Shown: piece after piece, positions 34,216 through 64,000 of the stretch
Layout: each line of letters begins with the position of its first letter
Numbering within the stretch: position 1 is the stretch's first letter
From: Octopus sinensis
Lineage: Eukaryota
NCBI RefSeq assembly: GCF_006345805.1
Contig: NW_021834674.1
Location: 1 to 64,000, forward strand
DNA length: 64,000 nt
Direction of reading: 5' to 3'
Notes under the pieces: model-generated
The model's database searches: none
What the model saw: only the letters and a program-made list of their open reading frames with translations
What the model was told of the DNA's origin: nothing
Position numbers and translations under genes: made by a program

Positions 34216-45345
<11,130 letters not shown>

Positions 45346-47860: not shown

Positions 47861-48925
47861 ATAAGTGATATGACAGGTGTATAAACCCTTAAATTAGGTT
47901 CTACAAATAAAAATAACTAAATAAAATAATTAGAATAAAATAAATAGTAAAAAAGAATGAAATTAATTTAATGAATTAATTTTTGTAATAATAAAATAAT
48001 TAGATTAAAATAAATTATATGAATAAACAAAAAAATATATACCCAAAAGATCAGACAACTTGACTCCCGAAGGAGAAATTGAAACCTAAGAAAATAACTA
48101 TAATTTTTAACTTTTCATGTTTATTTCCTTTTGAAAACCCTACTCGTTACCGCTTTTTCTTCCCAAAATGTGAGAATAATTTTAAAAGCGTCTACTTATA
48201 GACGACCCGCAATGTAGCAGCCGATTTTAAAGAGTGTCTTTATTTAGACTGGCTGCTGTAAAGTGGTCAACCAAGTTTAACATAGTATGATCTGCACTGC
48301 TACATATACAGCCGAGTTCGAAACAACAAGCGTTCGCACCTCTAGCTCCCGGCTTCAGTAATAAAGTCCATAGAAATGCTTTCAGCACCAGCTTACAGAC
48401 AAATTAATTGTGCTAACATTCATAATTTCGTATCAAAATTGTGTTCAGTAGTACTATATTTTTAAGGAAATGTAATACTACCAAATACAACTAACTTCAG
48501 ATAGTTTAGGCTAGAATAGATGGATCGTAAAAAAGATATGTAAATTAATTATTATGATGTCGCTTCCTCAGAGTTAGTTATAAATAAAATTTTACTTTTA
48601 TTTTTTGCCAAGTGGTGTGCATGCCATTGTGAATTGTTCCGCGTGCTACACATGACACGCGTGCCACAGGTTACAGACACCTGGTCTAGACACTCCAAGG
48701 AAAACCTCCAGACGTCTGAAGATGTTCAGCTATCCTGAACGTGTCGAGGCATAAACAGCCACCAGACTGAGGACACCTCCGTTACTACTGTTCACGACGT
48801 CCAGGACCACCAACTTACCTTCTGGGTCCAGGAAGATAATCTTTGTGTTGAGATCCAGGCGTCTCTGGGACAACACTGCCATTCCACCCCGCACCCCTCA
48901 TTCCCGTTTGACATGGAAATAAATA

Positions 48926-50070
48926 TCAGGCTGAGTAAAAAGTAAGCAACGTTTTGAAACATGAAATTCATCACAATGTATTCCACCAATGCGGAAATTT
49001 TATTCATCAAAGTCTGTACCATTAATATAAACACATTTTTGCCAATGAGTTACAAAGTTTGTTTATTCCGTTAACATAAAAATCTGGAGTTCTGGAGTTG
49101 ATGGACTCTTTGAACGCGCTTTCAGCATCGGTTTGATTTTTCAACTCCTTCTCTCGAGGAAACTATAAAGATACTTGAAAAAGTGGTAGTCGTTGGGAGA
49201 AAGGTCTTGGGAATAGGCTGAGTAGGGAATATCTTCGTAGCCAGATTCCCTAAACCTCTGGCGCGTCATTAGTGAAACGTGTGGTCGAGTATTGTCATGA
49301 AGAATGATTGGCCCTCTTCTGTTGACCAGTCTGAGACAGAGGAGTAGCAGTTTTTCGTTCATATTGGCAATTTCTTGGTAATATGTTTCTGCAGTAATGG
49401 ATTTTCTGGGTTTTAATAAGTTATAGTGGATGATTCCAACAGCACATCACTAAATAATCACCATAATCTCTTTTTTGAAGAGATCGAGTTTAGGGAAGCT
49501 TTTCGGTGCTTCATTTGGGTCCATCCACTGCGAAAAACATTTTCTATTATTATACAGAATCTACTTTTCATCGCAAATACGGTCAAGAATTGGATCGGTC
49601 TGGTTTCGGCGAAGAAGTGACGAGCACATTTCATAAGTTCACATTTTCTGATTTTCATTCAAATGGTGAGGTACTCATTTGTCGAGCTTTTCTGATTTTT
49701 CGATCGCATGCAAATGGATTCAGGCATTTTCTGGCTTACTTGAAGTTCTTTGCCAGTTCTCGAGTGGTTTTACGTGGGTCTTTCTCAATGACAATCTTCA
49801 GTTGACCGTCATACGATGACAGACGGGCGTCCACTACGCTCAAGATCTTCAGGTTTCCACTGCTAAATCGTTTAAGCCATTTTCAAACTGACCACTCACT
49901 GGTCATTTCCTCACCAAACGTTTCGTTGACATCGTGAGCAGTTTAGGCTGCTTTACATCCTTTTTTGATGTTGAATAGCAAAATTGCTCGAATATCGCGC
50001 TTTGACAGTTGCATTTCAGATGATTGCAACAACGGTGAAAAAATATCAATGTTACTTTATTGATGCATTT
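48926..50070 (-). mobile_element. Degenerate mariner (D,D34D) transposon
   Basis: FGEE..SV.KW.KRF.SG..ERSGRP..EKDPRKTTRELA; ILHDNTRPH; IPYSAYSQDLSPNDYHFF. TIR-like ta|tcaggctgagtaaaaagtaa at 48924; the other end is eroded. Confidence 0.85.
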
Positions 50071-50449
50071 GGGAAAGTCTATGTCTGAATTGTCTGTGTG
50101 TTTTGGGTTCTGTTTCTTTTTCTTTTGTGTGTTCAGGCGACTACTTGCCATTTTTGTCTTTCGTCGTCCCTATCCGCGCAAGGTATGTCTGAGTGCTCCG
50201 AACAGGGGAGGGGCAAATCTTGTAGAGCTTTTTGGCGTTGTCCTATTCATAACGTTGTTGCCTTTTTGGTGGCGGGGACCGGGGTTGATGCTGTTGTTTT
50301 TGCTGCTGCCCGTGCTGCTGTGATTAGTGTTGCTGCTACTGTTACAATTGATTTTGTAGCCGCGATCGTCACCTGCCTCTGTTGGTGCTGTTGCTATTGT
50401 TGTTATTGTTGCTGTGGTGGTGGTGTTGATGATGTTGGCAAAATTGAGA

Positions 50450-50760
50450 GGCTCCTTTCTCTAATTTGTTGTGGGCAATAGAAGAATTTTAGATGATTTG
50501 TGTCCCCACACAGATGATACCGAAACCATCAGCTTTCAAAGGCCACGTGGAGGTTGGTGCCACCGTGTGAATTTATGATATCTGGAATTGTGTCCAGATT
50601 TTGGCTGTCCATTTTCACCCACAATTTTAGGCCTTGACCCGAATAGTTTTGTTAGTAAAGTTTCCGCATCTGTAAGATGCTCGTTTTGACCTATATGTCC
50701 AAGAGGACATCTACCAGCAAGAATCAGCCGTCTATTTCTGGTGGTGTGTCTTCTTTTTTA
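50450..50760 (-). pseudogene. Possible decayed LINE ORF1/gag-like zinc-knuckle fragment
   Basis: The minus frame gives LKLWVKMD..LHVAFES*WFRYHLCGDTNHLKFFYCP, a degenerate CX2CX4HX4C, followed by low-complexity sequence. Confidence 0.3.
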
Positions 50761-51189
50761 GGGTCAAAGTAGATTGATTCCTTGCCTCCTCTTCATTTTT
50801 CTGTTATGTTTTTGTTGGTGCTGATGGTTGTGATGCTGTTGTTGTTGTTGCTACAACTACTGCTGCTGCTGCTGTCTTTGCTTTGTTTCTCAAAAATATT
50901 AACAAGCGGAGGTGACAAAATGTCAAAACGGATGATGTAAGAACCTTTACTTGCCTCGATTTGGGAAGCCAGACTGAACTTTTTCTTTTTAAAATATAAA
51001 TTTGTAGTTTTTAAAACTCAAAATTCGCCTTTAAGGGGCGAATTCTGGCCACCGCAGCTAGCCCCGCTTACAGCGAGGTGGGTTCTGTGGTCAATAAAAT
51101 TTTGAAAACAACATTGTAACAACAAATTCTAAAGAAAACTTAGAGCTCCGAACAACTAGTCTCCAAAACCGACACAAATAATAATAATA

Positions 51190-51385
51190 ACAATAAAGAA
51201 ATGGAGAAACTTTCAAAATACAAAGACCTGGAGATAGAGGTAACTCGAACGAGGAATCTAAAAACAGAAACAATTCCTATCATAGTAAGTGCATTAGGCA
51301 TGATAAAAAATTATTCACACAAATACATAACAAAAACACCAGGATTTACAAACACATATAACATACAGAAAATTGCATTGTTGAA
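51190..51385 (+). mobile_element. Second R4/Dong-like RLE LINE fragment
   Basis: KEMEKLSKYKDLEIEVTR..KTETIPIIVSALG..IQKIAL, homologous to 26492-26752 and preceded by (AAT)n. Confidence 0.7.
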
Positions 51386-52550
51386 TTATTCTTTTAGATC
51401 AGTATTTCTCAACGAGGATATCAGAGGAGAGTTTCAGGGAGTCGCTGGCGATGTATCGTGATGATCAAAAATCCAACCTGCTAAAATTTGGTTAGTGATT
51501 CAAACTGCAGACTCAACGCAAAATGGTCACATTTAATTCAAAGCGTTAAAAATGGTATGAAAACAATTGGTATGAGTTCACAAAGTCCAAACGATTAATA
51601 GGGAAAAACCTCCAGGCTACATCCCGAATATTCATTTCTTTGCCGAATTTCTACAATGTTTACGGCGATTCGTCTTGCTTTTTTATTTTTCATGCAATTT
51701 ACGCATGCTTGCACGCGTGGTGAACACAGTTCACGTCAAACAGCTGACTGAGTAAAGTTCACTATTCAATGCATGGGAGAAGGCCTAAACAAACACATTA
51801 TCGATTTTTGCACTTGCGAGATGAATTTCGGAACAGAAATAGCGCAGTTCAATTTTCATTCGCCTAAACTTTAAGTGACCTATGTTTGGTGGTTCTACGA
51901 TTTGTTGGCTTGGAGGAGATGTGCCGGGAAGTAAAAGACACAGACACACACACAGATACACAGATAGACACACAAGTTGAGTTTTATATATATAGATTTA
52001 CGTTCATGCTTTATTCTTGTTTTCAGTAAAAAAAAAGTAAGTAAAATGAAATCATGATAGTTTATTTAAGGAAAAACTTTGTATGAACGCTTCTAAAACT
52101 GGGGTACAGGAGAAATCCTTTGATACAATACAGTTGCTTGTGGGGTCCCATCGGATTTAACGACCCAACCGGGTTTACAACCACTGCGTATTTAGGGTCT
52201 ACGAAACTCATGGTTCGCTAGTTTTGTATATATATATATTAGACCCCCCTCCGAGTATGGTTACAGATGTGTGTAGGAGTGCGTTTGTGTTTGTGTGTGT
52301 GAGTTTGGTGTTTTCTTTGATATTATTACGCGTTAAAGCTATAATATTTTTATAAATTTCTTCACACTAATTTGTCGAAATTTAATTTTTTAGCTTTAAA
52401 TATCCAATCATGAAAACAAAAATATATTTGTCATGTGGAACAGGGGTGAATTTTAGTTCCTTCAGAGAATCTGCAATTTGAAGTTAATAACATTGAAATC
52501 TCTGACATTTCCTATTTTCTTCTTTTACAGATAAATCTACGCCTGGCAAT

Positions 52551-52741
52551 ATGTTTCACCACGTAGTATCATATAGACGGTCTCTTGTGTTGATACTGTG
52601 TACGATATTGTTTTTGGAGACTCAAGCTGATTCAGATATATGCAAGATATGTACTTGCAATTCACTTACAACAAATATAGATTGTGTACATCGCAATTTA
52701 CCATCGATTCCACAACCAATTCCGACGAATGTTGAATATTT
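52551..52741 (+). CDS. First coding exon of a secreted/membrane leucine-rich-repeat protein (signal peptide + LRRNT)
   Basis: Acceptor ttttacag| at 52530, ATG at 52551. Hydrophobic signal SLVLILCTILFLETQA, then LRRNT CKICTC..IDCVHRNLPSIPQPIPTNVEYL. Donor tt|gtaagt, phase 2. Confidence 0.88.
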
Positions 52742-53197
52742 GTAAGTATTTGACACTTTCTACGTATTTTCCACATCCAATATTTTAAATTCTCATTGAT
52801 TATGTTCTCAGCTAATCGCTTATGCTGTTTATCTCACAGCTTTAAGCACAATCTTATGTTAGAGTAAAGCAAATCGATATGTTACCTGCTGTGAAGTCAA
52901 ATAAACTGTTACTTACCATATTGAATTTATAATATATAACATCGCATACACAGAGATTGGCTATGACTAGTATCTGACTTTGATTTCATTTGTCTGAACT
53001 TATCAAATCTTACGGTATATTCAATGAACGGACAGTATAAAAACTTTAGTGCTAAGAAAACGTGTATTCCACATAGTTATATTATATCATTAATTAGTTG
53101 AATTGTTACTTATTGTTACAGTAATATGATATAATATCAGTTGATCGTGTCACAGAATAATTGTTAATTATTGTTTGTGTTAATTTTATAATAGAAT

Positions 53198-53415
53198 ATG
53201 CAGCGAGCTATCAGAATCGTTGTGCACGCCAGACAAAATGTTGAGCGGTATTTCGTTCGTCTTTACGTTTCGATTTTAAATTCTGTCGAGGTTGACTTTG
53301 CTTTTCATTCTTTTGGAGTCGGTAAAATAATTAGCAATTTATCTCTGAGATCAATGTAAAGGACTTGTCCCTTTCCCAAAATTTCAGGTTTGTTCCTATA
53401 GAAGAAATTATTATT
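53198..53415 (+). mobile_element. SINE family B copy in the LRR gene intron
   Basis: gcagcgagctatcagaatcgtt..gaggttgactttgcttttcattc..tttcaggtttgttcctatag with an (ATT) tail. Confidence 0.65.
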
Positions 53416-55089
53416 TTTATAATTAAAAATGATACAGATGGATTAAACAGCAGATAATGACGAGATCCGCTTAAATTGCCAAATTCTTAAAATACCTAAG
53501 TGAAGAAATCAAAATAGTGTTGTTTTAACAAATTATGAGGAATTTATTTTTGATAGAATGTCATCAGTAAAATTTACCCTATCACGAACACAATAAAACT
53601 TATTACAAAATTATGCAAGCTTAATTGAAGTTTCGGCTGATTGATGTATCCCCGTTCACCTGAAAATTTACGTAATTTTTAAGTAAATTATTAAAATTTA
53701 ACGTCTCAAGAAATGGAATAGAATAAAAAAGAGTAATTATTTGATACATGCAATCATAACAAATACTCTGTTGCAACACATTGCTCTTCCAGGTGATTAC
53801 TTCCAGTTAATTGGCTTGCATCATTGCATTAATCACCTTAAACTTTCAGTTTTAATCAAATATTCTAATACTAAAGTGGATCAATTCATTCGATCAGATC
53901 TATTTCTCAAAACATTTGGAACGTTTTGACAAAATGAGAAATCCTAATGTAAAATAAAGAGAAAAGTTTCAATAATGGAATTCCTAAATCTCGTATAACT
54001 CAAGATGTTGAATAGTAAAGTTGAAGTTCTATTTAATAAGTTAGATATTTTCATCGTTCATAACTTGAGCGAGGATAGGCACAAATCTTTTGACCGTCTA
54101 GCAGAATACATTGCGTTCTGACACACGGCAATCTGACTTCAAGTCCCGCCAAGGTCAACCTTGGGTCATTCATTTCAGAGATCAATAAAGAACCATAACA
54201 GTTCAATGAACAAATGCAACTATGAGGACCTCGAATAAGACACCTTGCAGTATATTGTCCACTTTTTATTTTACCGATTTTGGAGAAAGGATCATACAAG
54301 TTTTTTAACCCCTGCAAGATCTCCAATACTTGTGAGACACATATCATTAATATTCCGTTTGAGCTGTTGCAGGTTAACCTTTACAGGAATGATTAACAGG
54401 GATGCTATTTAGGGGATGAAGGATTTAGCATAGATGGCTAATAATGGTAACAAACTGAGGTTTAATACAGCAAGAGTAAGGAGTAACGGGCTAAAAAAAG
54501 ACGAAAAAACTAAGGCAATGTATGTTGCCACATCCCTTTTTTAAATAACACCCTTAACCAGTTAAATCACCATGTAAGGTTGTTCTCCTTTGTAGCACAT
54601 AACTCAAAATTATATCAGGGTTTCCCCACTCTACCATCACCAATTCTATTAATAAATCCCTTTCTATTTCTGTTATGTTTTCCTTCCTAGTCTATTATTT
54701 CAGTCTTGAAGTTTTAGGGGTTTATTTATTTTTGTGAAGAACTTTTATGCATCAATTATGCAAAGGAGAGGAGTTTACTTTTGCAAAGATAAATTACTTT
54801 TGACAGCAAAGTGTAATAACAAATAGAATGCTCATTGGACAGAAACAAGATATTTATAAATAAAGCTGACTTCTGAGATGATAAAAATATCTTCCACTGA
54901 AAACTGATGTTGCAACGAAGGCTTTGTAAATCTAATTCAAATCACAAATATTTTGAACATCCATTCTTTTCTCATATTTTACATGCATGTGTGTTTTTCA
55001 TTCATACTTTACGTGGTGACTTAAATCTGTTTTATATCTTATATAATAAAATATACGAAAATACAAACAGAACCTTCGTGAAGACGAAA

Positions 55090-55805
55090 AGAAAGCCTTA
55101 CAAACTGCAAATTGACAATTTAATCATCCTAAACGAAACCGATTGGGGAAGGGTGATAGCAGTCACGGACCAAGACTACTATAAAGATAAAATATTGGAA
55201 ACAGACTAATCCTGCTACAAGGAAGAACCAAGACACGCGGAGAAAGTAATAATGAATACACCCAAAATTAAGATAAATGAATACCAACGTTCGTTCACAG
55301 ATAAAGAGAAAGATTATTTATGCAGCTCTGTAATGAAAGAGAGTAATTTCTATGGATCACCCAAGATCTGCGAATGCTCCAAAATGCAAGGATCAGCATA
55401 TAAAAATACTAAGACCTACGGACATCAAATTGAGACCAACAGTTGCTGGACCTTGAGCCCCAACACAACAACTGAGCCATCTTTTGGATATACTCCTCAA
55501 ACCGTTGTGCCCATTAATGCCCAGCTATACCCGAGACGATATGGATTTCATCAAACACATTCCACCCACTGTCCCAGAACGTACTATACTTAAAAGATTT
55601 TACTAATCTTTGTACAAATACATCACACTTTGGGCCTGGGAGCAATGAAACACTGGGTAGAAAAACATAGCGGACGGATGGACGAACGCTTCAAAACGCA
55701 TTTCCAAAGACACACGCCGGGAACTAGAAGACGACACCTTTAGATTCGATAATAAGCTGTATCGACAGATAAAAGGACACCACTACGGGGACGAGGTTCA
55801 CACAC
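55090..55805 (+). mobile_element. Decayed Penelope/Poseidon-type RT fragment in the intron
   Basis: DNLIIL..D.GRVIAV.DQDYY.DKI; FYGSPKI; RPTVAGP.APTQQLSHLLDILLKPLCPLMPSY.RDDMDF; NTFRFDNKLYRQIKG..GTRF. Confidence 0.75.
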
Positions 55806-56099
55806 ATACTCGCACCCAGAGGTAGATATACATATGTGTGTATATTTCTGAGTGTATATGTGTGTATGTGCTTATATGTGCATACATGTGCGTGTATGTG
55901 TGTGGATGTGTGTGTTGGTACATAGAGAGGCGAAGCGGATACTCGAGGTTGTGCAAGTCAAGTAGGAAATAAACATGAAACGGCTGCCACGTTAAGATAT
56001 TCTTCTCCTCCTGCTTCTTCTTCTTCTCCTTCTGCTTCTTCTTCTTCTTCTTCTTCTTCTTCTTCTTCTTCTTCTTCTTCTTCTTCTTCGTTATCTTTC

Positions 56100-57225
56100 T
56101 TCTTCTTTTTCTTCTTCGTTATCTTTCTTCTTTTTCTTCCTTTCATTCTGAAGTCACAGTGTTTGATATCGTATCACAAATATTTTCCATATAATCTATT
56201 TTACTCTTTCTTTACTGCTATAGAACTCTGACATGGAACAGCATTTCAACCATCAAAGAAGGTGCATTCACGGGGCTTTCAAATTTAAAAGAATTGTAAG
56301 TTCGTTCAGTTTCTTGATACTATTTTCCGAAAGTAATAATTGATGCTGATATATAAGCTCACAAACGTATAAAATTTCAGACTGAACCAAACAAAATCAA
56401 TTCAAATTTGTAGAATGAATACGATTTAGGAAGATACAAAGAGAATATGAGAGAGCGAGACAATGTGAAAGAAAGAGAGAGAATTTGAGAGAGAAAGTGA
56501 AATAATAGGAAAAATATAATGTTCCTTTATTGTAGTTGCTTTGTTTCAATTCGCATCTCAATAACTCATTTTTGTTCCCCAAATTTCAATGATTTTGATA
56601 TGAATTTGTATTAGAAATGGTAACGTTTGTGAGTTTACATGTTTGCATCAAATATTTTTAGCTGAAGTATATGTGTATGTTCATATATAAGTGTAGTTCT
56701 GTGTGAAATGTGACTATATTATTCCTTTATTTTATATTTTGCATCCTCCTCCATTTCTTATTTCAATATTCTCCTTCGTGTTTCGATATTATCATTCAAC
56801 TTCGAATTTTGTCATTCACTTCACGTTATTTATGTAATAGAGCAACTGAAGTGGAAGCGGAAAATATATATTCGAATAATATAGTCACATACATTCTATC
56901 TGTAAACCTGAAATACTTACTGTACTTGTAAGCTGGAATATTTGGCCTGATACAATTAAACTGCTGATATATTTCTTGTAAGCGTGTGTTTTCTAATATT
57001 CTTGTGACAATGAAGCGATATGAAATAAATAATCTCTCTCACCATATTTCCACAAGGGTGAGTGGGAATATGTGTGATGTGAGTGTGCATACCGCATTCC
57101 GTCGTTGATACTATGAATATAAGAATGCGTATGAGTGCATTTGAATATGTTGATTTCTGATTCCGTATATTCCCTGATTTTTCAGCCATGTTTCTCGCCC
57201 AAGATTTATCGATCTATCTCTTCAT
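56100..57225 (+). repeat. Exon-plus-intron cassette, duplicated at ~63095-64000+
   Basis: About 100 bp upstream and >700 bp downstream of each exon align; by eye ~12 differences in the first ~170 intron bases. Confidence 0.92.
56224..56295 (+). CDS. 72-bp single-LRR exon, cassette 1: (L)TLTWNSISTIKEGAFTGLSNLKE(L)
   Basis: Pyrimidine tract + tag acceptor, gtaagt donor, phase 2-2, exactly 24 codons. Fits LxxLxLxxNxIxxIxxxAFxGLxxL and is in frame with exon 52551-52741. Confidence 0.92.
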
Positions 57226-60209
57226 ATTCTTCTCCTCTTCATTTCCTCTTCATTTCTTCTTCTTCTTCCTTTTCTTCTTCTTCGTCTTCTTCTTCTTTCC
57301 TCCACCATTCCTCCTGCTCTTCCTCCTCGTCATTCTTTTTCTTCTTCCTCTCCTTCTTCTTCTTCTTCTTCTTCTTCTCCTTCTTCCGCAATTCCTCCTG
57401 CTCCTCCTCCTCGTCCTCCTTTTTCTTCTTCTTCTTCTTCTTCTTCTTCTTCTTTTCTTCTTCTTCTTCCTCCACCATTCCTCCTGCTCCTCCTCCTCGT
57501 CCATCTTCTTCTTCTTCTTCTTCTGCCTCCGCCATTCCTCATGCTCCTCCTCCTCGTCCTTCTTTTTCCTCTTCTTCTTTATCTTATTCTTCTTCTTCTT
57601 CTTCTTCTTCTTCTTCTTCTCCTTCTTCCGCAATTCCTCCTGCTCCTCCTCCTCGTCCTCCTTTTTCTTCTTCTTCTTCTTCTTATTCTCTTCTTCTTCT
57701 TCTTCTTCTTCTTCCTCCACCATTCCTCCTGCTCCTCCTCCTCGTCCATCTTCTTCTTCTTCTTCTTCTGCCTCCGCCATTCCTCATGCTCCTCCTCCTC
57801 GTCCTTCTTTTTCCTCTTCTTCTTTATCTTCTTCCTCTTCTTCTTCTTCTACTTCTTCTTTTCTTCTTCCTCCACCATTCCTCCTGCTCCTCCTCCTCGT
57901 CCTCCTTCTTCTTCTTCTTCTTCTTCCTCCGCCATTCCTCATGCTCCTCCTCCTCGTCCTTCTTCTTCTTCTTCTTCTTTTTCTTATTCTTCTTCTTCTT
58001 CTTCTTCTTCTTCTTCTTCTTCCTCCACCATTCCTCCTGCTCCTCCTCCTCGTCCTTCTTCTTCTTCTTCTTCTTTTCTTCCTCCGCCATTCCTCATGCT
58101 CCTCCTCCTCGTCCTTCTTTTTGTTCTTCTTTATCTTCTCCCTCTCCTTCTTCTTCTTCTTCTTCTGCTTCTTCTTTTCTTCTATCTTTCTTGTTCCCTC
58201 CTCCCCCTACCCCTCCTTCTTTTCTACTTCTAATGTTTTCTCTTCTCCTTCTCCGTCTTATTCTTCCTTTCTTATTGTAATTCTCTTCCCCTCCTCCTCC
58301 TTTTTCTTCTTGTAATTCTCGCCCTACCCCTCCCCATCTCCCTCCTTTTTCCTCCTTCTTCTTCTTCTCTTCCACCTCCTCCTCCTCATCATCTTTCTTT
58401 TTCTTCTTCTACTTCTTCTGCTCCTTCAACCTCCTCCTCTTCCTCCTCCTCCTTTTTCCTCCTCTTCTTTCTTCTTCTTATTCATCTTTTTTCCTTCTTC
58501 TTCTTTCTCTTCCTCTACCTATTCTTCTTCCTCTTCTTCTTGTACTTCTCATTTCTCTTCTCCTTCTTTTTCTTCCTCTTCTTCTTCTCCTTCTACTTCT
58601 CCTCCCCGTCTTCCTCCTTCTTTTTCTTATTCTTCTCTTTCATCTTTATTTTTCTTCTTCTCTTCTTCTTCTTCTACTTTGTACTTCTTCATCTACTTCT
58701 CTCTCCCTCCTCTTTCTTCTTCTTATCTTCTTTTTGTTATTCTCCTTCTCCTCCTCCACATCCTCCTTCTTCTACTTCTTCTTTTACTTCTACTTCCCCT
58801 TCATACTCCTCCTCCTTTTGTCTCCTCTTCCTCTTCTTCTTCTTCTTCTTCTTCTTCTTTTCTTCTTCTTCTTCTTCTTCTTCTTCTTCTTCTTCTACTA
58901 CTCCTACTTCTTCTTCTTCTTCTTCTTCTTCTCCTTCTTTTCCTCTTTCTTCTTCTTGTAATTCTTACTCTCCCACTCCCCCCTCATCCTCATCCTTTTT
59001 CTTCTTCTGCTTTTTCTTTACTTAATTCTACTTTCTACTTCTTCATCTACTTCTCCTCCTCCTCCTTCTTCTTCTTCTTGTCTTCTTTCTTTTTATTCTC
59101 TTCCTTCTTCTCCTTTTCCACCTCCTTCTTCATTTCTTTCTTCTTTTTCATGCTTCTTCTTCTTCTACTTCTTCTTCTTCTTCTTCTCCTTCTTCTTCTT
59201 GTTTCTCTTCTACTCCTCCTTCTTCTTCTTCTTTTTTCTTCCTCTTCTTCTTCCTCTCATCACCCTCATCCTCCTCTTTTTAATCTACTACATCTTTTTC
59301 TTTTACTCTACCCTCTGCTCCTCCTCCTATTTCCCTCCCCCTCAATGCATCTCCTTTTCCTCCCCCGTCCTCATCCTTCTTCTTTTCCTCCCCTCCTCCT
59401 CCAACTCCTCCTTTTTCTACTGCTTCTCCCCCTCTTCTTCCTTGTCTTCTCCTTTTCCCCTTCCCCCTTCACCACTTCTTCTTCGGATTCTACTTCTCCT
59501 TAATCTCTTTCCTCTTCCTCTCTTCTTCTTCTTCCTCTTCTTCTTGTACTTCTCATTTCTCTTCTCCTTCTTTTTCTTCCTCTTCTTGTTTCTCTTCTAC
59601 TCCTCCTTCTTCTTTTTCTTATTCTTCTCTTTCATCTTTATTTTTCTTCTTCTTCTTCTTCTTCTACTTTGTACTTCTTCATCTACTTCTCTCTCCCTCC
59701 TCTTTCTTCTTCTTATCTTCTTTTTGTTATTCTCCTTCTCCTCCTCCACATCCTCCTTCTTCTACTTCTTCTTTTACTTCTACTTCCCCTTCATACTCCT
59801 CCTCCTTTTGTCTCCTCTTCCTCCTTCTTCTTCTTCTTTTCTTCTTTTTCTTCGACGTCTTTTTTCCTTCTTCTTCTTTCTTCTTCTTCTACTACTCCTA
59901 CTTCTTCTTCTCTTCTTTCTTCTTCTTCTTCTTCTTTTCTTTTTCTTCTTCTTCTTCTTCTCTTCCACCTCCTCCTCCTCATCATCTTTCTTTTTCTTCT
60001 TCTGCTTTTATTTACTTAATTCTACTTTCTACCTCTTCATCTACTTCTCCTCCTCCTCCTTCTTCTTCTAATTGTCTTCTTTCTTTTTATTCTCTTCCTT
60101 CTTCTCCTTTTCCACCTCCTTCTTCATTTCTTTCTTCTTTTTCATGCTTCTTCTTCTTATACTTCTTCTTCTTCTTATTCTTCTTCTTCTTCTTTTTTTC
60201 TTCTTCTTC

Positions 60210-60241
<32 letters not shown>

Positions 60242-63135
60242 CTTCCTCTCATCACCCTCATCCTCCTCTTTTTAATCTACTACATCTTTTTCTTTTACTC
60301 TACCCTCTGCTCCTCCTCCTATTTCCCTCCCCCTCAATGCATCTCCTTTTCCTCCCCCGTCCTCATCCTTCTTCTTTTCCTCCCCTCCTCCTCCAACTCC
60401 TCCTTTTTCTACTGCTTCTTCCCCTCTTCTTCCTTGTCTTCTCCTTTTCCCCTTCCCCCTTCACCACTTCTTCTTCGGATTCTACTTCTCCTTAATCTCT
60501 TTCCTCTTCCTCTCTTCTATTATTTTCCTATAATAAGTTTTAGCTACTATATTGTTTCACGTTGTTCTGTTGATTCTGTGGTACCGTGTGGTTATTTATA
60601 CATACTTCCACCGAAATAAATGTTTTGTTATATTTGTTGTAGTCTTTGTTGTTGTTGTTCTTCTTCTTCTTGTTCTTCTTCTTCTTTTTCTTCTTCTTCT
60701 TCTTCTTCTTCTTCTTTTTCTTCTTTTTCTCCTTCTTCATCTTCTTCTTCTTCTTCTTCTTCTTCTTCTTCTTCTTCGTCTCCTTCTACTTCTTCTTCTT
60801 CTTCTTCTACTTCTTCTTCTTCTCCTTCTTCTTCTTCTTTTTCTCCTCCTCTACTTCCTCTTCTTGTTTCTTTCTTGTTCTTCTTCTTCTATTTCTCCTT
60901 CTTCATCTTCTTTTTCTTCTTTTCTTCTTCTCTTTCTTGTTCTTATTCTTCTACTTCTACTTCCACTCCTTCTTCTTCTTTTTCTTCTCCTCTACTTCCT
61001 CTTCTTGTTTCCTTCTTCTTCTTCTATTTTTCTTCTTCTTCTTCTTCTATTTCTTCTTCTTCTTCTTCTTCTTCCTTCTTCTTCTTCCCTTATTCGTCAT
61101 ATTACCATATAAATTCCTTCTTTACATAATGAACATTATTCAATATTTCGTCGCAATTACATACGATGTGAAACTAAGCAACGTTTCTTCCTGCTTCATA
61201 TATCTTCTGAACGATGACATTTTTTCGCATTTCCTTAATATATCGACGAATCAACTACTGGACTCTATTCATGATATATCTCTTTGAATGTGTCTGGACA
61301 TGACAACGACTGGCAGTTATTTATCCGCATTGTCGTTAGATTAATTTCTTCTTCTTCTCCTTCTTCTACTTCTTTTTCTTTTCTCTTCTTCTTCTTCTTT
61401 TTTTTCTTTTTCTTCTTCTTCTCCTTCTTCTTCTTCTTCTTCTTTTTCTTCTTCTTTATCTTCTTCTTCTTCATTTCTTCTAATCTTCTTTTCTCTTCCA
61501 CTTCTCCTTCATTTTCTTCTTGTAATTCTCTTCCTCCTCCTCTTCTTCCCCTCCCCCACCTTTTTCTTCTTGTAATTCTTATCCCCCTCCCCCTTCCCAT
61601 CCTGTTCCTTTTTCACCTTCCTCTTCTTCTCCTTCTTTTTCTCCTCCTTCTTCTTCTTATTATTATTCTTCTACATCTTCTCCTTCTTCTCCTCCACCTT
61701 TTTCTTCTTTTTCTTCTACTCCTCCTCGTCTTACTCCTCCTTTCTTTTTCTTCATCTTCTTCTTCTTATTATTATTATTATTCTCCTTCTTCTTCTTCTT
61801 CTTTTTCTTCTTTTCTTCTCCTTCTACTTCTTCTCCCCCTCCTCCTCGTCCTCCTCCTCCTTCTTCCTCTTCTAATTGTTTTTCTTCTTCTTGTTCTTCT
61901 TGTTCTTCTTTATTTTCTTTATTTATTTCTCTTCCACCTCCTCTCCACCCCTCCTCCTCCTTTTTCTTCTTGTAATTCTCCTCCTCCCCCTCCCCTCCTG
62001 CTCCTTTTCTCTCCTTCTTCTTCTTCTCCTCGTCCTCCTTCATTTTCTTTTTCTTCTTCTCTCTTTTCAATATATTTTGTTCTATTTCTTTTTCTTCTTC
62101 TTTTTCTCCTTCTTCTTCTTCTTCTTCTTCATCTTAAACTTCTTCTTCTTCTTCTCCTTCTCTTTCTTCTTTATCCTCTTATTCTTCGTCCTCTCGCCTG
62201 CTGCTCCTTCTCTTTCTTCTTCTTATTCTTATTCTTATTCTCTTCCTTCGTCTTCTACCTCTCCTCCTCGTCCTCCTTCTTATTAATTTTTTCTTCTTCT
62301 TCTTCTGCTTCTTCTTCTTCCTCCTCTTCTTGTTTTTCTTCTACTCCTACTTCTACCACTTTATCCTCCTCCTCCTTTTTCCCCTTCCTTCTACTTCTAT
62401 TCCTTTTTTTCCCCTTGTTTTTCTAGTTCTTCTAATTCTTCTTCTTCTTCTTCTACTTCTCCTCCTCGTTTTCCTCCTTCTTATTCTTCTTCTCTTTCGT
62501 CTACTTTCTTTTTTTTCTTTTTCTACTTCTTTATGTACTTCTCCTCCTACATTTTTCTTCTTCTTATCTTCTTCTTTTTGTTATTCTCCTTCTCCTCCTC
62601 CTCTTTCATTTCTTCTTCTTTTTCTTCTACTTCTTATTCTTCACTTTCATTCTCCTCCTCCTTTTTCGTCCTCTTCCACCTTTTTCTTCTTTTCTTCTCC
62701 TTCTTCTCCTTCTGCTTCTTCTTATTGTTCTTCTCCTCCTCCTCCTACTTCTTCTTCTTCTTGTTGCAATTCTTCTTCTTCCCCTCTACCTCCTCATCCT
62801 CCTTCTTTTTCTTTTTCTTCTTCTTCATCTACTTCTCCTCTTCCACTTCCTATTTCTTCTTCTTATCTTCTTCTTTTTATTATTCTCCTCCTTCTCCTTC
62901 TCCTTCTTCTTCTTTTTCTTCTTATCCTAGTTCTTCCTCCCTTTTATCCTCCTCCTCCTCCTTTTCCTCCTAATCCTTATTCTTCTTCTTTTTCTTCCTC
63001 TTCTTTTTCTTCTTCTCCATTCTTCTTCTTCTAATTATTCTTCTTCTTCTTTTCTTCCTCTTCGCCTTCTCCTCCTCTTTCTTCTTCTTCTTCATGTTTT
63101 TCTTCTTCTTCGTTATCTTTCTTCTTTTTCTTCCT
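57225..63135 (+). repeat. ~6 kb polypyrimidine (CTT/CCT-type) low-complexity tract with higher-order repeats
   Basis: Almost pure C/T. Recurring ttcctcc(a/g)ccattcctc(c/a)tgctcctcctcctcgtcc at 57.3-58.1 kb, a ~1 kb internal duplication (58535 vs 59541), and short unique islands at ~60520-60640 and ~61095-61345. Confidence 0.95.
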
Positions 63136-63217
63136 TTCATTCTGAAGTCACAGTTTCTGGTGTTTTCTCACAAATATTTTCCATATAATCTATTTTACTC
63201 TTTCTTTACTGCTATAG

Positions 63218-63289
63218 ATCTCTGTTCAAGAACAAGATTTCAACCATCAAAGAAGGTGCATTTACGGGGCTTTCAAATTTAAAAGAATT
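63218..63289 (+). CDS. 72-bp single-LRR exon, cassette 2: (L)SLFKNKISTIKEGAFTGLSNLKE(L)
   Basis: Same acceptor and donor context as 56224-56295, phase 2-2, 24 codons. Confidence 0.92.
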
Positions 63290-64000
63290 GTAAGTTCCTT
63301 CGGTTTCTTGATACTATTTTCCGAAAGTAATAATTGATGCTGATATATAAGCTCACAAATGTATAAAATTTCAGACTGCGCCAAACAAAATCAATTCGAA
63401 TTTGTAGAATGAACACGATTTAGGGAGATAAAAAGAGAATAGGAGAGATTGAGACAATGTGAAAGAAAGAGAGAGAATTTGAGAGAGAAAATGAAATAAT
63501 AGGAAAAATATAATGTTCCTTTATTGTAGTTGCTTTGTTTCAATTCGCATCTCAATAACTCAGTTTTGTTCCACAAATTTCAATGATTTTGATATGAATT
63601 TGTATTAGAAATGGTAACCTTTGTGAGTTTACATGTTTGCATCAAATATTTTAAGCTGAAGTATATGTGTATGTTCATATATAAGTGTAGTTCTGTGTGA
63701 AATGTGACTATATCATTCCTTTATTTTATATTTTACATCCTCCTCCATTTCTTATTTCAATATTCTCCTTCGTGTTTCGATATTATCATTCAAAATCGAA
63801 TTTTGTCATTCACTTCACGTTATTTATGTAATAGAGCAATTGAAGTGGAAGCGGAAAATATATATTCGAATAATATAGTCACATACGTTCTATCTGTAAA
63901 CCTGAAATACTTACTGTACTTGTAAGCTGGAATATTTGGCCTGATACAATTAAAATGCTGATATATTTCTTGTAAGCGTGTGTTTTCTAATATTCTTGTG

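What the first reader, a model, noticed from the sequence alone, without database searches (positions are those of the whole stretch)
52531..64000. LRR gene built from duplicated one-repeat exon cassettes diversified only at the ligand-binding face
Seen: a signal peptide + LRRNT exon is followed by two 72-bp phase 2-2 exons 6994 bp apart with closely similar flanking introns. The exons differ at 8 of the first 19 nt, all non-synonymous (T>S, T>F, W>K, S>K), and at only one synonymous site in the other 53 nt. The changed residues are x5, x7, x8 and x10 of LxxLxLxxNxL. Established: these are the concave-face positions that are hypervariable in lamprey VLRs and plant LRR receptors, and exon-per-LRR shuffling is described in brown algal ROCO genes. 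Inference: an invertebrate recognition receptor with a modular cassette array under diversifying selection, possibly with alternative cassette splicing or copy-number variation. Only two cassettes are visible here.
Basis: partly seen in the sequence, partly recalled or inferred. Interest (0 to 1): 0.82.

Follow-up and report, generated by a model that had tools for sequence, protein, structure and literature searches.

The report
Octopus hypervariable one-repeat LRR exon array
This is the start of an already annotated octopus receptor gene whose binding domain is built from near-identical one-repeat exons that differ almost only at the residues predicted to touch a ligand, a pattern shared by a whole octopus-only gene family linked to adhesion G-protein-coupled receptors.

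Summary
Exon 1 (52531-52741) encodes a signal peptide and LRRNT. Two 72-nt phase 2-2 exons lie at 56224-56295 and 63218-63289, 6994 bp apart. They differ at 8 of their first 19 nt and at 1 of the other 53, and their flanks are 93.6-96.6% identical.

The gene is Octopus sinensis XP_036355777.1, named 'LRRC4C isoform X5'. Its RefSeq models carry five such cassettes, each skip a different one, and all stop at an exon boundary.

Five paralogous loci show the same design. In 12 type-1 and 8 type-2 cassettes the four codons x3, x5, x7 and x8 have nucleotide diversity 0.54 and 0.47. The rest of the exon has 0.09 and 0.05, and the flanking introns 0.02-0.07. The interleaved Leu and Asn codons are almost invariant (one synonymous Leu site varies), and pN/pS is 1.8 in variable codons against 0.18 in the backbone.

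Every cassette follows a sense-strand (TTC)n tract, which spans 5.9 kb in this window. Close relatives continue into LRRCT, a Cys-rich module, a sub-threshold HRM match, GAIN/GPS and 7tm_2. This is probably the octopus-specific adhesion-GPCR expansion described by Ritschard et al. 2019.

Three things remain unshown: this gene's C-terminus, how much of the pattern is selection and how much gene conversion, and the transcript evidence behind the isoforms.

The parts
44577..52530 (+). Upstream region shared with paralogous loci. It is part of a recent segmental duplication that also covers exon 1, intron 1 and the first cassette.
   Evidence: window 44577-56141 aligns to L001 2047-13608 at 94.8% over 11.7 kb. 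L003 matches at 97.0% from 49990, and L002 and L004 at 92-94% from 51371.
52531..52741 (+). Exon 1. It starts at the acceptor ttttacag|, has a 20-nt leader, an ATG at 52551, a signal peptide (MFHHVVSYRRSLVLILCTILFLETQA), an LRRNT Cys knot (CxxCxCx8C) and the start of the first LRR. It ends in phase 2.
   Evidence: It is 100% identical to XP_036355777.1 residues 1-64. LRRNT is sub-threshold in Pfam in relatives (E 3e-4 to 1e-2). The signal peptide is called by inspection only. The exon is 93-97% identical in four paralogous loci.
52742..56223 (+). Intron 1 (3482 nt). It is mixed sequence with an unclassified 113-aa ORF and a (TTC)n tract at 56000-56139 just upstream of cassette A.
   Evidence: The whole intron is conserved in the paralogues.
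56224..56295 (+). Cassette A. It is a 72-nt phase 2-2 exon encoding (L)TLTWNSISTIKEGAFTGLSNLKE, and its variable patch is at 56225-56242.
   Evidence: It is present in RefSeq isoforms X2, X4 and X5 and skipped in X3.
56296..57218 (+). Conserved unique intron segment downstream of cassette A. It belongs to the roughly 1.1-kb repeat unit that travels with every type-1 cassette.
   Evidence: Identity over 700 nt is 94.6-98.2% to eight of the nine other type-1 cassette flanks in the window and four loci. The exception, L003_13712, is 67%.
57219..63133 (+). Degenerate (TTC)n microsatellite filling most of the A-to-B intron. It is pyrimidine-rich on the sense strand and contains an internal duplication of about 1 kb.
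   Evidence: period 3, about 1950 copies, 66% matches. (GC skew down to -0.9). (85% pyrimidine, with 46 of 70 100-nt windows at 90% or more). (59233-59526 matches 60225-60518 at 99%).
63149..63171 (+). Cluster of 7 substitutions in the intron upstream of cassette B. It is private to this copy, and its counterpart upstream of cassette A is 56155-56177.
63218..63289 (+). Cassette B. It is a 72-nt phase 2-2 exon encoding (L)SLFKNKISTIKEGAFTGLSNLKE, and its variable patch is at 63219-63236.
   Evidence: It is present in isoforms X2, X3 and X5 and skipped in X4.
63290..64000 (+). Conserved intron segment downstream of cassette B, cut off by the end of the window.
   Evidence: 24 differences in 711 nt against the copy after cassette A.

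Best explanation
The region is the 5' end of one member of a recently amplified, Octopus-restricted gene family. The family's extracellular ligand-binding domain is an array of single-LRR exons.

Shown here:
- Each 72-nt exon is symmetrical (phase 2-2) and sits in a near-identical unit of about 1.1 kb.
- Each exon is preceded by a sense-strand (TTC)n tract.
- Genes and cassettes are only about 3-8% diverged at neutral-looking sites, but the codons for x3, x5, x7 and x8 are close to saturation. x10 varies less.
- The Leu and Asn codons between those variable codons are almost invariant; one synonymous Leu site varies.

Inferred mechanism:
- Tandem duplication and unequal exchange between the repeat units add, delete and shuffle cassettes. 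Gene conversion probably contributes too, and the long TTC/GAA tracts may help.
- Selection favours new residues, or keeps different ones, on the concave beta-sheet face.
- Because every cassette is in-frame on its own, exon skipping yields receptors with different numbers and combinations of binding repeats. RefSeq models show this for this gene and its paralogues.
- The (UUC)n introns are plausible binding platforms for polypyrimidine-tract-binding proteins that could control skipping.

Inferred from relatives: the protein continues through LRRCT, a Cys-rich module, a sub-threshold HRM match and GAIN/GPS into a class-B 7TM domain. That would make it an adhesion GPCR with a variable LRR recognition head. 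Published expression of that expansion suggests it acts in the nervous system, suckers or skin.
For: Identity: the translated exons are 100% identical to Octopus sinensis XP_036355777.1.

Cassette count and skipping: five cassettes appear in isoforms X2-X5, and each isoform lacks a different one of the first four; the fifth cassette is present in all of them. Paralogues have isoform sets of 409/385/361/337 aa and 525/501/477 aa.

Family-wide variability: among 12 type-1 cassettes the pi values are 0.044 (intron -60..-1), 0.332 (exon 1-19), 0.080 (exon 20-63), 0.253 (exon 64-72) and 0.06-0.07 (downstream intron). The 12 nt of codons x3, x5, x7 and x8 have pi 0.54, against 0.09 for the rest of the exon. 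Eight type-2 cassettes give 0.47 against 0.05, with introns at 0.02-0.04.

Selection: by Nei-Gojobori, variable codons have pN 0.55-0.64 and pS 0.31-0.36, while the backbone has pN 0.036 and pS 0.20. Exon positions 5-6 and 14-17 do not vary among intact cassettes even though they sit between positions with pi up to 0.78; position 7, the synonymous third base of the Leu codon, varies (pi 0.39).

Protein level: in 55 distinct type-1 and 17 distinct type-2 cassettes, entropy is 2.1-3.3 bits (type 1; 1.8-2.3 in type 2) at x3, x5, x7 and x8 and below about 0.5 bits at most backbone positions.

Structure: the AlphaFold model of relative P0037 has LRR pLDDT around 90 and a 24-residue period with the strand on x3-L4-x5. 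Foldseek neighbours are LINGO-1, chondroadherin, LRIG1, NGL, LRRTM2, LGR4, Nogo receptor and TLR5.

Recency: 11.7 kb around exon 1 is 94.8% identical to a paralogue. Cassette A's 700-nt flank is 98.2% identical to a cassette in another locus and 96.6% identical to its neighbour B.

Adhesion-GPCR link: P0037 has the same type of N-terminus as the window gene (its close paralogue P0002 is 92% identical over exon 1). P0037 and P0025 are 71% identical through LRRCT and the Cys-rich module. P0025 and P0031 are 57% identical through HRM and GAIN. P0031 and P0049 carry 7tm_2, and P0038 carries GPS.

Literature: an octopus-specific adhesion-GPCR expansion has been described in which some members have LRRs, the genes are co-localised and positively selected, and expression is in axial nerve cord, suckers and skin (PMC6408891).

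TTC tracts: a tract lies upstream of every cassette in all loci examined.
Against: - The C-terminus of this particular gene was not seen. Its RefSeq models stop at an exon boundary, and four of the five paralogous contigs examined end within 1.4 kb of their last cassette; the fifth, L005, carries a complete cassette array.
- Three close O. vulgaris models end in a shared non-TM tail (…TAETNF), so some members may be secreted.
- Isoforms come from automatic RefSeq models. Some contain chimeric cassettes that splicing at the annotated sites cannot produce, which warns of mis-mapping or template switching among near-identical exons.
- Backbone synonymous diversity (0.20) is higher than intron diversity (0.06). 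Together with multi-nucleotide codon differences, this fits old patch diversity with homogenised flanks as well as it fits recent positive selection.
- The private intron cluster shows that clustered changes can also arise without selection on protein.
- The equation with 'group 3' of Ritschard et al. was not checked gene by gene.
Confidence: 0.7

Rival explanations
1. Gene conversion mosaic without ongoing positive selection. On this view the patch sequences are old. Frequent conversion and unequal crossing-over homogenise introns and backbone across cassettes and paralogues, and purifying selection merely preserves each cassette's established specificity. The contrast between patch and flank would then reflect homogenisation, not fast adaptive change.
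For: - Flanks form a star-like set with no within-gene clustering. Cassette A is closest to a cassette in another locus.
- Variable codons differ at 2-3 nucleotides each.
- Backbone pS is 0.20, above intron pi of 0.06.
- The same patch recurs on different backbones: SLFKNK and SLFENK in one gene, and RG in both L003 cassettes.
Against: - Positionally homologous first cassettes of paralogues have entirely different patches (TLTWNS, YLSENN, DLRGNK, DLNENN), although the whole surrounding 6-12 kb, including a unique intron 1 with no other copies to convert from, is 92-97% identical.
- pN exceeds pS within the variable codons.
- Even under this model, selection for diversity is needed to stop conversion from erasing the patches.
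Confidence: 0.2
2. A local mutational hot spot, or clustered multi-nucleotide mutation events, with no role for selection on the protein.
For: A comparable cluster of 7 differences in 19 nt lies in the non-coding sequence upstream of cassette B.
Against: - The intron cluster is private to one copy, whereas the exon patch varies in all 20 cassettes examined.
- Within the patch, Leu codon positions 5-6 and Asn codon positions 14-16 stay invariant (apart from a single change in the pseudo-cassette) between saturated codons.
- The variable codon at exon positions 68-70 is 50 nt away from the patch and is again an x position.
- The same register is seen in an unrelated-flank cassette class.
Confidence: 0.04
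3. Assembly artefact. On this view A and B are two haplotypes, or a collapsed or expanded repeat, of a single cassette wrongly placed in tandem across an unresolvable microsatellite.
For: - The 5.9-kb degenerate (TTC)n between A and B is hard to assemble.
- Four of the five paralogous contigs examined break next to such tracts.
- L001 and L005 are redundant copies of one locus.
Against: - The true haplotig pair L001/L005 is 98.9% identical and has identical cassettes. The A and B units are only 93.6-96.6% identical and differ in four residues.
- RefSeq isoforms X2 and X5 contain A followed by B.
- Tandem arrays of up to 12 cassettes exist on one contig.
Confidence: 0.04
4. The gene encodes a secreted or otherwise non-GPCR LRR protein, or a decaying truncated duplicate, rather than an adhesion GPCR.
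For: - No model with the MFHHVVSYRR-type N-terminus reaches a 7TM domain.
- P0012, P0016 and P0017 share a C-terminal tail with no TM segment.
- Pseudo-cassettes occur in paralogues, for example L002 13724 with a lost acceptor and a stop codon.
Against: - P0025 carries type-1 and type-2 cassettes and runs into the GAIN domain. P0049 joins LRRs and 7tm_2 in one model.
- The models are fragmentary because the genes span more than 100 kb and the contigs break.
- All three window exons are intact and have good splice sites.
Confidence: 0.25

Closest known systems
Octopus-specific adhesion-GPCR expansion ('group 3' of Ritschard et al. 2019, PMC6408891)
   Same: - It is restricted to Octopus.
- Its genes are co-localised and recently duplicated.
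- Some members carry LRRs, and GPS and adhesion-type 7TM domains are present.
- Positive selection has been reported.
- Relatives of the window gene are named 'adhesion GPCR G6-like' and carry GAIN/GPS/7tm_2.
   Different: - That paper, as far as the passages retrieved show, treats whole proteins. It does not describe the one-LRR exon cassettes, the conserved introns with variable patches, the TTC tracts or cassette skipping.
- The identity of the two families was not checked gene by gene.
- This gene's own 7TM part was not seen.
Ectocarpus LRR-ROCO genes (Zambounis et al. 2012, PMC3341825; PMC11378527)
   Same: Each LRR is a single 72-nt (24-aa) exon. The LRR domain is under diversifying selection, exons are shuffled and duplicated, birth and death rates are high, and later work describes alternative splicing.
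   Different: - ROCO genes belong to a different kingdom and encode a different protein: a cytoplasmic ROC-COR GTPase, against a secreted or membrane ectodomain with a signal peptide and LRRNT here.
- ROCO introns hold inactivated and reverse-strand LRR exons. Here every cassette found lies on the sense strand.
- No microsatellite introns are described for ROCO genes.
Lamprey and hagfish variable lymphocyte receptors
   Same: Diversity is concentrated at the concave-face x positions of 24-residue LRR modules. The protein has a signal peptide and LRRNT, variable LRRs and an LRRCT. Modules are drawn from a pool of near-identical cassettes. VLR-containing structures appear among the structural neighbours.
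   Different: - VLR cassettes are non-spliced donor segments copied into an incomplete gene by somatic gene conversion.
- Here the cassettes are ordinary exons with AG/GT borders, in order and on one strand. The diversity seen here is in the germline and, in the RefSeq models, by splicing.
- There is no evidence of somatic rearrangement.
Animal LRR genes with one LRR per 72-nt exon (Slit, LGR4-6 and glycoprotein-hormone receptors; from my own knowledge, not checked here)
   Same: They have exon-per-repeat architecture with symmetrical phases and an extracellular 24-residue LRR fold with N- and C-caps. LGRs also join LRRs to a 7TM domain. LGR4 and LGR5 are among the Foldseek hits.
   Different: - Those are conserved single-copy orthologues with old, diverged repeats and unrelated introns.
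- Here the introns are about 95% identical between repeats, and the family is lineage-specific.
- The RefSeq names 'slit-like' and 'LRRC4C' reflect generic LRR similarity. No EGF, laminin-G or Ig domains were found in relatives.
ADGRA2/ADGRA3 (GPR124/GPR125)
   Same: The architecture is an LRR head followed by HRM, GAIN and 7TM. The precomputed Pfam family PF26588 is listed for several relatives; one of them, P0044, is named 'ADGRA2/3 GAIN domain-containing protein' by UniRef.
   Different: - No Ig domain is present.
- A Cys-rich module and a possible SEA-like segment take its place.
- The family is large, tandemly expanded and variable rather than conserved.
- Orthology was not tested.
Dscam1 and clustered protocadherins (functional analogy only)
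   Same: Large numbers of surface-receptor isoforms arise from arrays of similar exons. A link to neural tissue is suggested by the published expression of the octopus expansion.
   Different: - Dscam uses mutually exclusive exon clusters, and protocadherins use promoter choice.
- Here the models show optional skipping of in-frame cassettes.
- No homophilic binding or cell-specific isoform choice has been shown.

Membership tests
Extracellular 24-residue LRR ectodomain with N-terminal cap | Repeats matching LxxLxLxxNxL with a 24-residue period | tested here: met
   Pfam LRR_8 scores E=9e-30 on the 100%-identical protein P0001. The two window exons translate to LTLTWNSISTIKEGAFTGLSNLKE and LSLFKNKISTIKEGAFTGLSNLKE. 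The AlphaFold model of relative P0037 has a strand every 24 residues at pLDDT around 90.
Extracellular 24-residue LRR ectodomain with N-terminal cap | Signal peptide and a Cys-knot LRRNT | tested here: inconclusive
   The CxxCxCx8C pattern and a hydrophobic N-terminus are visible. Pfam LRRNT is found only below its cut-off in relatives (15.9-20.7 bits against 25.8). No signal-peptide predictor was available.
Adhesion GPCR (class B2) | A GAIN/GPS domain followed by a secretin-type 7TM domain in the same protein | not testable with these tools
   The window ends 711 nt after cassette B, and the gene's RefSeq models are 3'-truncated. In relatives the feature is present: P0049 has LRR plus 7tm_2 (39.6 bits against 20.6), P0031 has 7tm_2, and P0038 has GPS (49.5 bits). 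These are linked to the window gene's subfamily by 57-71% identity over shared domains.
ADGRA2/3 subfamily | LRR - Ig - HRM - GAIN - 7TM domain order | tested here: not met
   No Ig-family hit appears in P0037, P0071, P0077 or P0012. HRM is only sub-threshold (17.8-18.0 bits against 26.2). A Cys-rich segment follows LRRCT instead.
Slit / LRRC4C (NGL), the names given by RefSeq | Slit has four LRR domains plus EGF and laminin-G. NGL has LRR plus Ig plus TM plus a PDZ-binding tail. Both have orthologues across bilaterians. | tested here: not met
   No EGF, laminin-G or Ig hits were found in relatives. All homologues with E<1e-20 are from Octopus or of unknown source.
Variable lymphocyte receptor system | An incomplete germline gene completed by somatic copying from flanking cassettes that lack splice sites | tested here: not met
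   Cassettes have conserved AG/GT borders and a common strand and phase, with two exceptions: the pseudo-cassette in L002 and a frameshifted copy in L004. They are joined by splicing in the annotated mRNA models.
Exon-per-LRR shuffling arrays (Ectocarpus ROCO type) | One 72-nt exon per LRR, recent exon duplication, and an excess of non-synonymous change at solvent-exposed positions | tested here: met
   This places the locus in the same design class only. The ROC-COR domains that define ROCO proteins are not expected and were not seen in any relative.

The most novel reading that the evidence does not exclude
The octopus LRR adhesion-GPCR cluster may be a germline-encoded, splicing-driven diversity system. 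Dozens of tandem genes each hold up to a dozen optional, in-frame LRR cassettes with variable concave faces. The beta-strand of each repeat is split across two exons, so x3 comes from the upstream cassette and x5-x8 from the downstream one, and every skipping event creates a new binding strand. (UUC)n introns kilobases long could act as splicing-repressor platforms. Together these features would give individual neurons, sucker receptor cells or immune cells distinct recognition heads. That would be a third, independent solution to the surface-diversity problem, alongside Dscam1 and clustered protocadherins, and built on the VLR-type scaffold. A more remote version holds that the chimeric cassettes seen in RefSeq isoforms reflect real recombination between cassettes, either as polymorphism or somatically.
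Probability: 0.15. Interest if true: 0.88.

Novelty: new variant of a known kind. Interest (0 to 1): 0.62.

Why it matters
Octopuses lack antibody-type immunity. They are known for lineage-specific expansions of surface molecules, such as protocadherins and GPCRs, that are thought to underlie their nervous system and their 'taste by touch' suckers.

This locus shows at nucleotide resolution how one such expansion creates diversity. A one-repeat exon unit has been copied within and between genes so recently that the introns are still about 95% identical. Yet four ligand-facing codons per repeat are close to randomised, and each unit can be left out without breaking the reading frame.

This is a clean natural example of focal diversification on an LRR scaffold. 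Here it sits at the head of what is probably a signalling 7TM receptor. It yields testable questions: which ligands are recognised, whether isoform choice is cell-specific, and whether TTC tracts control splicing or promote cassette turnover.

It also explains a practical problem. Four of the five paralogous contigs examined break inside these arrays, so current gene models are fragments carrying misleading names such as 'slit-like' and 'LRRC4C'.

Tried and rejected
- **Exact look-ups of the window gene's RefSeq isoforms.** Fetching the rest of its scaffold failed because the isoforms were not on record.
- **O. vulgaris relative P0012.** Its locus could not be fetched because the gene spans 105 kb. 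As a result, cassettes C-E of this gene and its 3' end were never seen as DNA.
- **More exons in the window.** tblastn of family proteins against the whole window found nothing beyond the three exons. A cassette blast found no further or reverse-strand copies.
- **The upstream 52 kb.** It holds only repeats and transposon remnants.
- **The Cys-rich module after LRRCT.** It looks like a Ly6/uPAR three-finger domain (…CCVGHLCN…), but Pfam gave no hit and the AlphaFold model was unreliable there (pLDDT below 50 from residue 384). This remains an untested lead.
- **Literature searches.** No prior description of the cassette architecture in cephalopods was found. The search for a citable source on 72-bp LRR exons in Slit also found nothing usable, so that comparison rests on my own knowledge.
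- **Transposon spread of the cassette unit.** I considered this and rejected it. The copies always lie in ordered, same-strand, in-phase arrays inside segmentally duplicated genes.
- **Collections not used.** The prokaryote, phage and plasmid collections, Rfam and the RNA-model tools have no bearing on this eukaryotic locus.


Full report
**What is in the window**

- An exon begins after the acceptor ttttacag| at 52531 and has its ATG at 52551.
- It encodes MFHHVVSYRRSLVLILCTILFLETQADSDICKICTCNSLTTNIDCVHRNLPSIPQPIPTNVEY. That is a hydrophobic signal-like N-terminus, a CxxCxCx8C LRRNT knot and the start of a first repeat. It ends in phase 2 at 52741.
- Two 72-nt exons follow at 56224-56295 (A) and 63218-63289 (B), exactly 6994 bp apart. 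Both are framed by ttactgctatag|…|gtaagttc.
- A and B differ at exon positions 2, 8-12, 18, 19 and 46. This changes T>S, T>F, W>K and S>K at x5, x7, x8 and x10 of LxxLxLxxNxL. The ninth change is synonymous.

The surrounding unit is duplicated as well. Region 63000-64000 matches 56011-57006 at 93.6%, and the 711 nt downstream of the exons differ at only 24 sites. With intron divergence of 31/795, eight changes in 19 nt has P = 2.7e-7, and only 0.02% of permutations reach that density.

One correction to 'only at the ligand-binding face' is needed. A second cluster of 7 differences in 19 nt lies in the intron about 50-70 nt upstream of B. The family alignment shows it is private to that copy.

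Most of the A-B intron is a 5.9-kb degenerate (TTC)n tract, pyrimidine-rich on the sense strand, with a 1-kb internal duplication.

**Which gene it is**

The spliced translation is 100% identical to Octopus sinensis XP_036355777.1, 'leucine-rich repeat-containing protein 4C isoform X5', a 160-aa protein on a 72.6-kb scaffold. Its sister isoforms X2-X4 are also 160 aa.

Decomposed into 24-residue units, the four models draw on five cassettes in the order A, B, LNLGRNN…, LSLFENKF…, LYLGSNS…. Each model omits a different one of the first four. All four models end exactly at an exon boundary (…NLKQL), so they are 3'-truncated. The rest of the scaffold could not be fetched.

**The family**

The first search returned four more O. 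sinensis proteins with the same signal peptide and LRRNT (86-94% identical over exon 1) and different cassettes. Their loci (L001-L004) were fetched. In every case the contig ends 0.8-1.4 kb after the last annotated cassette, which shows that the assembly breaks in these arrays.

A fifth locus, L005, is a whole 52.7-kb contig. It carries exon 1, twelve cassettes, and then an LRRCT exon and two Cys-rich-module exons. L001 is a 98.9%-identical redundant copy of the start of L005, probably a haplotig, with identical cassettes. That gives a yardstick of about 1% for allelic divergence.

The paralogy is segmental. Window 44577-56141 aligns to L001 at 94.8% over 11.7 kb, and L003 reaches 97% over 6.6 kb.

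There are two cassette classes, each with its own conserved introns:
- Type 1: x-L-x-x-N-x-I-[SA]-T-I-K-E-G-x-F-T-G-L-S-N-L-K-x, with acceptor ttactgctatag.
- Type 2: …I-S-R-I-E-K-E-M-F-Q-G-L-H-x-L-E-x, with acceptor ttcctgcttcag.

The window's A and B, and the three further cassettes of this gene, are all type 1.

**Focal variability**

Aligning cassettes with 200-nt flanks shows introns and exon backbone almost unchanged from copy to copy and locus to locus. A few codons are scrambled.

| Measure | Type 1 (n = 12) | Type 2 (n = 8) |
|---|---|---|
| pi, last 60 nt of upstream intron | 0.044 | 0.039 |
| pi, exon 1-19 | 0.332 | 0.278 |
| pi, exon 20-63 | 0.080 | 0.045 |
| pi, exon 64-72 | 0.253 | 0.143 |
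| pi, downstream intron | 0.06-0.07 | 0.02 |
| pi, 12 nt of codons x3, x5, x7, x8 | 0.54 | 0.47 |
| pi, other 60 exon nt | 0.09 | 0.05 |

- Column by column, positions 2-4, 8-13 and 68-70 reach pi of 0.5-0.8 (position 4 only 0.22). Of the interleaved Leu (5-7) and Asn (14-16) codons, positions 5, 6, 14 and 16 do not vary at all. Position 7, the synonymous third base of the Leu codon, has pi 0.39, and position 15 changes only in the pseudo-cassette. A mutational hot spot would not produce that alternation, which argues for selection.
- By Nei-Gojobori counting on eight intact type-1 exons, variable codons have pN 0.55-0.64 and pS 0.31-0.36. The 18 backbone codons have pN 0.036 and pS 0.20.
- At protein level, 55 distinct type-1 and 17 distinct type-2 cassettes from 85 family proteins show 2.1-3.3 bits of entropy (type 1; 1.8-2.3 in type 2) at x3, x5, x7 and x8, and about 1 bit (type 1) at x10 and x2. 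Most backbone positions show less than 0.5 bits. The pattern used to collect units restricts the backbone somewhat, so that contrast is slightly inflated.
- An AlphaFold model of relative P0037 has pLDDT around 90 through its 11 repeats. It places a short strand on x3-L4-x5 every 24 residues.
- From general knowledge of LRR structures, this strand and the residues just after it line the concave face that binds ligand in VLRs, TLRs and plant receptors.
- The exon boundary falls inside the L4 codon. Each repeat's strand therefore takes x3 from the upstream exon and x5-x8 from the downstream one, and skipping a cassette creates a hybrid strand.

**How the pattern arose**

Two readings fit, and they are not exclusive.

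*Recent amplification with strong positive selection.* Positionally homologous first cassettes of the paralogues have unrelated patches (TLTWNS, YLSENN, DLRGNK, DLNENN). Yet the entire surrounding region, including a unique intron 1, is 92-97% identical.

*Older patch diversity kept by selection while exchange homogenises the rest.* Several observations favour this.
- Flanks form a star with no within-gene clustering. A's flank is 98.2% identical to a cassette in another locus and 96.6% to its neighbour B.
- Variable codons differ at several bases each.
- Backbone pS exceeds intron diversity.
- Similar patches recur on different backbones.

Because all donors share the same backbone, any conversion tract would be visible only in the patch. 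Either way, selection for diversity at the x positions is required. Cross-species orthologous cassettes and complete arrays are needed to apportion the two readings.

**Alternative cassette use**

Besides this gene's four models, one paralogue has 13 RefSeq isoforms of 409, 385, 361 and 337 aa. Another has seven retrieved isoforms (numbered up to X9) of 525, 501 and 477 aa. Decomposition shows them to be skipping variants, mainly of the first few cassettes, with the C-terminal cassettes constant.

In L005, two intact cassettes with good splice sites (28668 and 31667) are used by none of the 13 listed isoforms.

There is a caveat. Several isoforms contain chimeric cassettes, with the 5' patch of one exon on the backbone of another. 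These cannot arise at the annotated splice sites. They may come from unassembled paralogues or alleles, from RT template switching, or from aligner freedom between near-identical exons. The underlying reads could not be examined, so the isoform evidence is second-hand.

Every cassette in every locus is preceded by a sense-strand pyrimidine tract of (TTC)n type. The inter-cassette introns are 0.8-2.4 kb in loci L001-L004, against 6.9 kb here. I infer, but did not test, two possible roles. The (UUC)n RNA could recruit polypyrimidine-tract-binding splicing repressors. The TTC/GAA DNA could favour the breakage and misalignment that drive cassette turnover.

**What the protein is**

Foldseek places the LRR domain with the neuronal and matrix extracellular LRR proteins: LINGO-1, chondroadherin, LRIG1, NGL-1 and NGL-3, LRRTM2, LGR4 and LGR5, Nogo receptor and TLR5.

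Searching with the region that follows the LRRs in the O. vulgaris relative P0012 found 37 proteins. All are from Octopus (sinensis, vulgaris, bimaculoides) or of unknown source. Many are named 'adhesion G-protein coupled receptor G6-like', and several carry PF26588, GPS or 7tm_2 (P0044 is named 'ADGRA2/3 GAIN domain-containing protein' by UniRef).

Pfam confirms 7tm_2 in P0049 (which also has LRRs) and in P0031, and GPS in P0038. A chain of overlaps links the window gene's N-terminal type to the 7TM part:
- P0037 and P0025 are 71% identical through LRRCT and the Cys-rich module.
- P0025 and P0031 are 57% identical through the HRM-like and GAIN regions.

The family architecture is therefore signal peptide, LRRNT, n variable LRR cassettes, LRRCT, Cys-rich module, a possible SEA-like segment, a sub-threshold HRM-like segment, GAIN/GPS and 7TM.

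This probably corresponds to the octopus-specific adhesion-GPCR expansion of Ritschard et al. 2019. In that study 5 of 22 members had LRRs, the genes were co-localised and showed positive selection, and expression was highest in axial nerve cord, suckers and skin (PMC6408891).

For this particular gene the 7TM end is inferred, not seen. Some close O. vulgaris models end in a shared tail with no TM segment, so a secreted form cannot be excluded.

**Comparison with known systems**

- The closest design parallel is the Ectocarpus LRR-ROCO family, which has a 72-nt exon per LRR, exon shuffling and diversifying selection (PMC3341825), with alternative splicing described later (PMC11378527). That family is in a cytoplasmic GTPase of a brown alga.
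- Exon-per-LRR structure is also ordinary in Slit and LGR genes (my own knowledge). Those repeats are old and their introns unrelated.
- The scaffold and the position of the diversity resemble VLRs. The VLR mechanism, somatic copying of non-exonic cassettes, is contradicted by the regular splice sites and ordered arrays.
- The RefSeq names (LRRC4C, slit-like, chondroadherin-like, LINGO-like) are generic LRR hits, not orthology.

**Verdict**

The gene is already annotated and the family expansion is published, so this is not a new kind of gene.

I found three things undescribed in the searchable literature:
- the cassette-level anatomy, with a recently amplified exon unit, about 95% conserved introns and four near-saturated codons per repeat;
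- the (TTC)n introns;
- the combinatorial skipping in what is probably an adhesion GPCR.

I rate it a new variant of a known kind, with interest about 0.6.

Noticed in passing
window 34241-44628: This is a tandem array of about three and a half copies of a repeat of roughly 2.9-3.1 kb, 94-97% identical to each other. Each copy carries a near-identical 118-aa ORF on the minus strand (36315-36671, 39183-39539, 42318-42674) with no Pfam hit. Parts of the array also occur upstream of the paralogous genes in L001 and L003.
   Followed up: partly
window 11728-13911 (+): Adjacent, partly overlapping ORFs of a non-LTR retrotransposon are present. Pfam finds RVT_1 in 12333-12977 and 12943-13911, split by a frameshift. 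The rest of the upstream 50 kb is AT-rich, full of microsatellites ((TA/CA)n-derived 'YIYIYI' ORFs) and contains no other recognisable gene.
   Followed up: partly
window 56155-56177 vs 63149-63171: A dense cluster of 7 substitutions in 19 nt lies in non-coding sequence upstream of cassette B. It is absent from the other nine type-1 cassette flanks compared at that point. It looks like a single complex mutation or a micro-conversion from an unknown donor.
   Followed up: partly
window 57219-63133: The (TTC)n intron has higher-order structure. 59233-59526 matches 60225-60518 at 99%, and 58661-58859 matches 59651-59849 at 94%, which together indicate a duplication of about 990 bp. There are also imperfect repeats with a period of about 150-250 nt at 57300-58100 (57324, 57569 and 57724; 82-85% identical). 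Two non-repeat islands sit at about 60510-60640 and 61100-61340.
   Followed up: partly
L002 13724-13795; L004 15914-15985; L005 11131-11202: Three cassettes look damaged. One pseudo-cassette has lost its acceptor (AG to AA) and has an in-frame stop. Two otherwise intact cassettes each have a 1-bp indel in a run of A's near the 3' end. These indels may be real or may be homopolymer assembly errors.
   Followed up: no
L005 28668-28739 and 31667-31738: Two intact cassettes with good splice sites lie between the last cassette used and the LRRCT exon at 38982. None of the 13 listed RefSeq isoforms of that gene includes them.
   Followed up: no
RefSeq isoforms of the L005 gene and of the P0046 gene (proteins P0047, P0051, P0053, P0056, P0062, P0069): Some isoforms contain chimeric cassettes. 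One example is the YLSENN patch on the backbone of a downstream cassette. A GT and an AG are available at the homologous internal site GAAG|GT.. / GAAG|GA... These could be artefacts of mapping, signs of unassembled copies, or real recombinants.
   Followed up: partly
L001 2946-17751 vs L005 1-14862: The two O. sinensis contigs are 97.6-98.9% identical over 14.8 kb and carry the same cassettes. The public assembly therefore holds this locus twice, as a haplotig or an overlap, and RefSeq annotates it as two genes.
   Followed up: yes
family proteins, e.g. P0037 residues ~385-478; L005 exons at 43815-43907 and 45865-46050: A Cys-rich module of about 90 residues follows LRRCT and ends in CCVGHLCNKNDF. 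It is reminiscent of Ly6/uPAR three-finger domains and is tandemly triplicated in P0045. There was no Pfam hit, and the AlphaFold model was unreliable there.
   Followed up: partly
protein P0024 (O. vulgaris, 477 aa): One relative of the post-LRR region carries ankyrin-repeat Pfam hits instead of LRRs. This may be a fused or mis-joined gene model in the 12-Mb O. vulgaris cluster.
   Followed up: no
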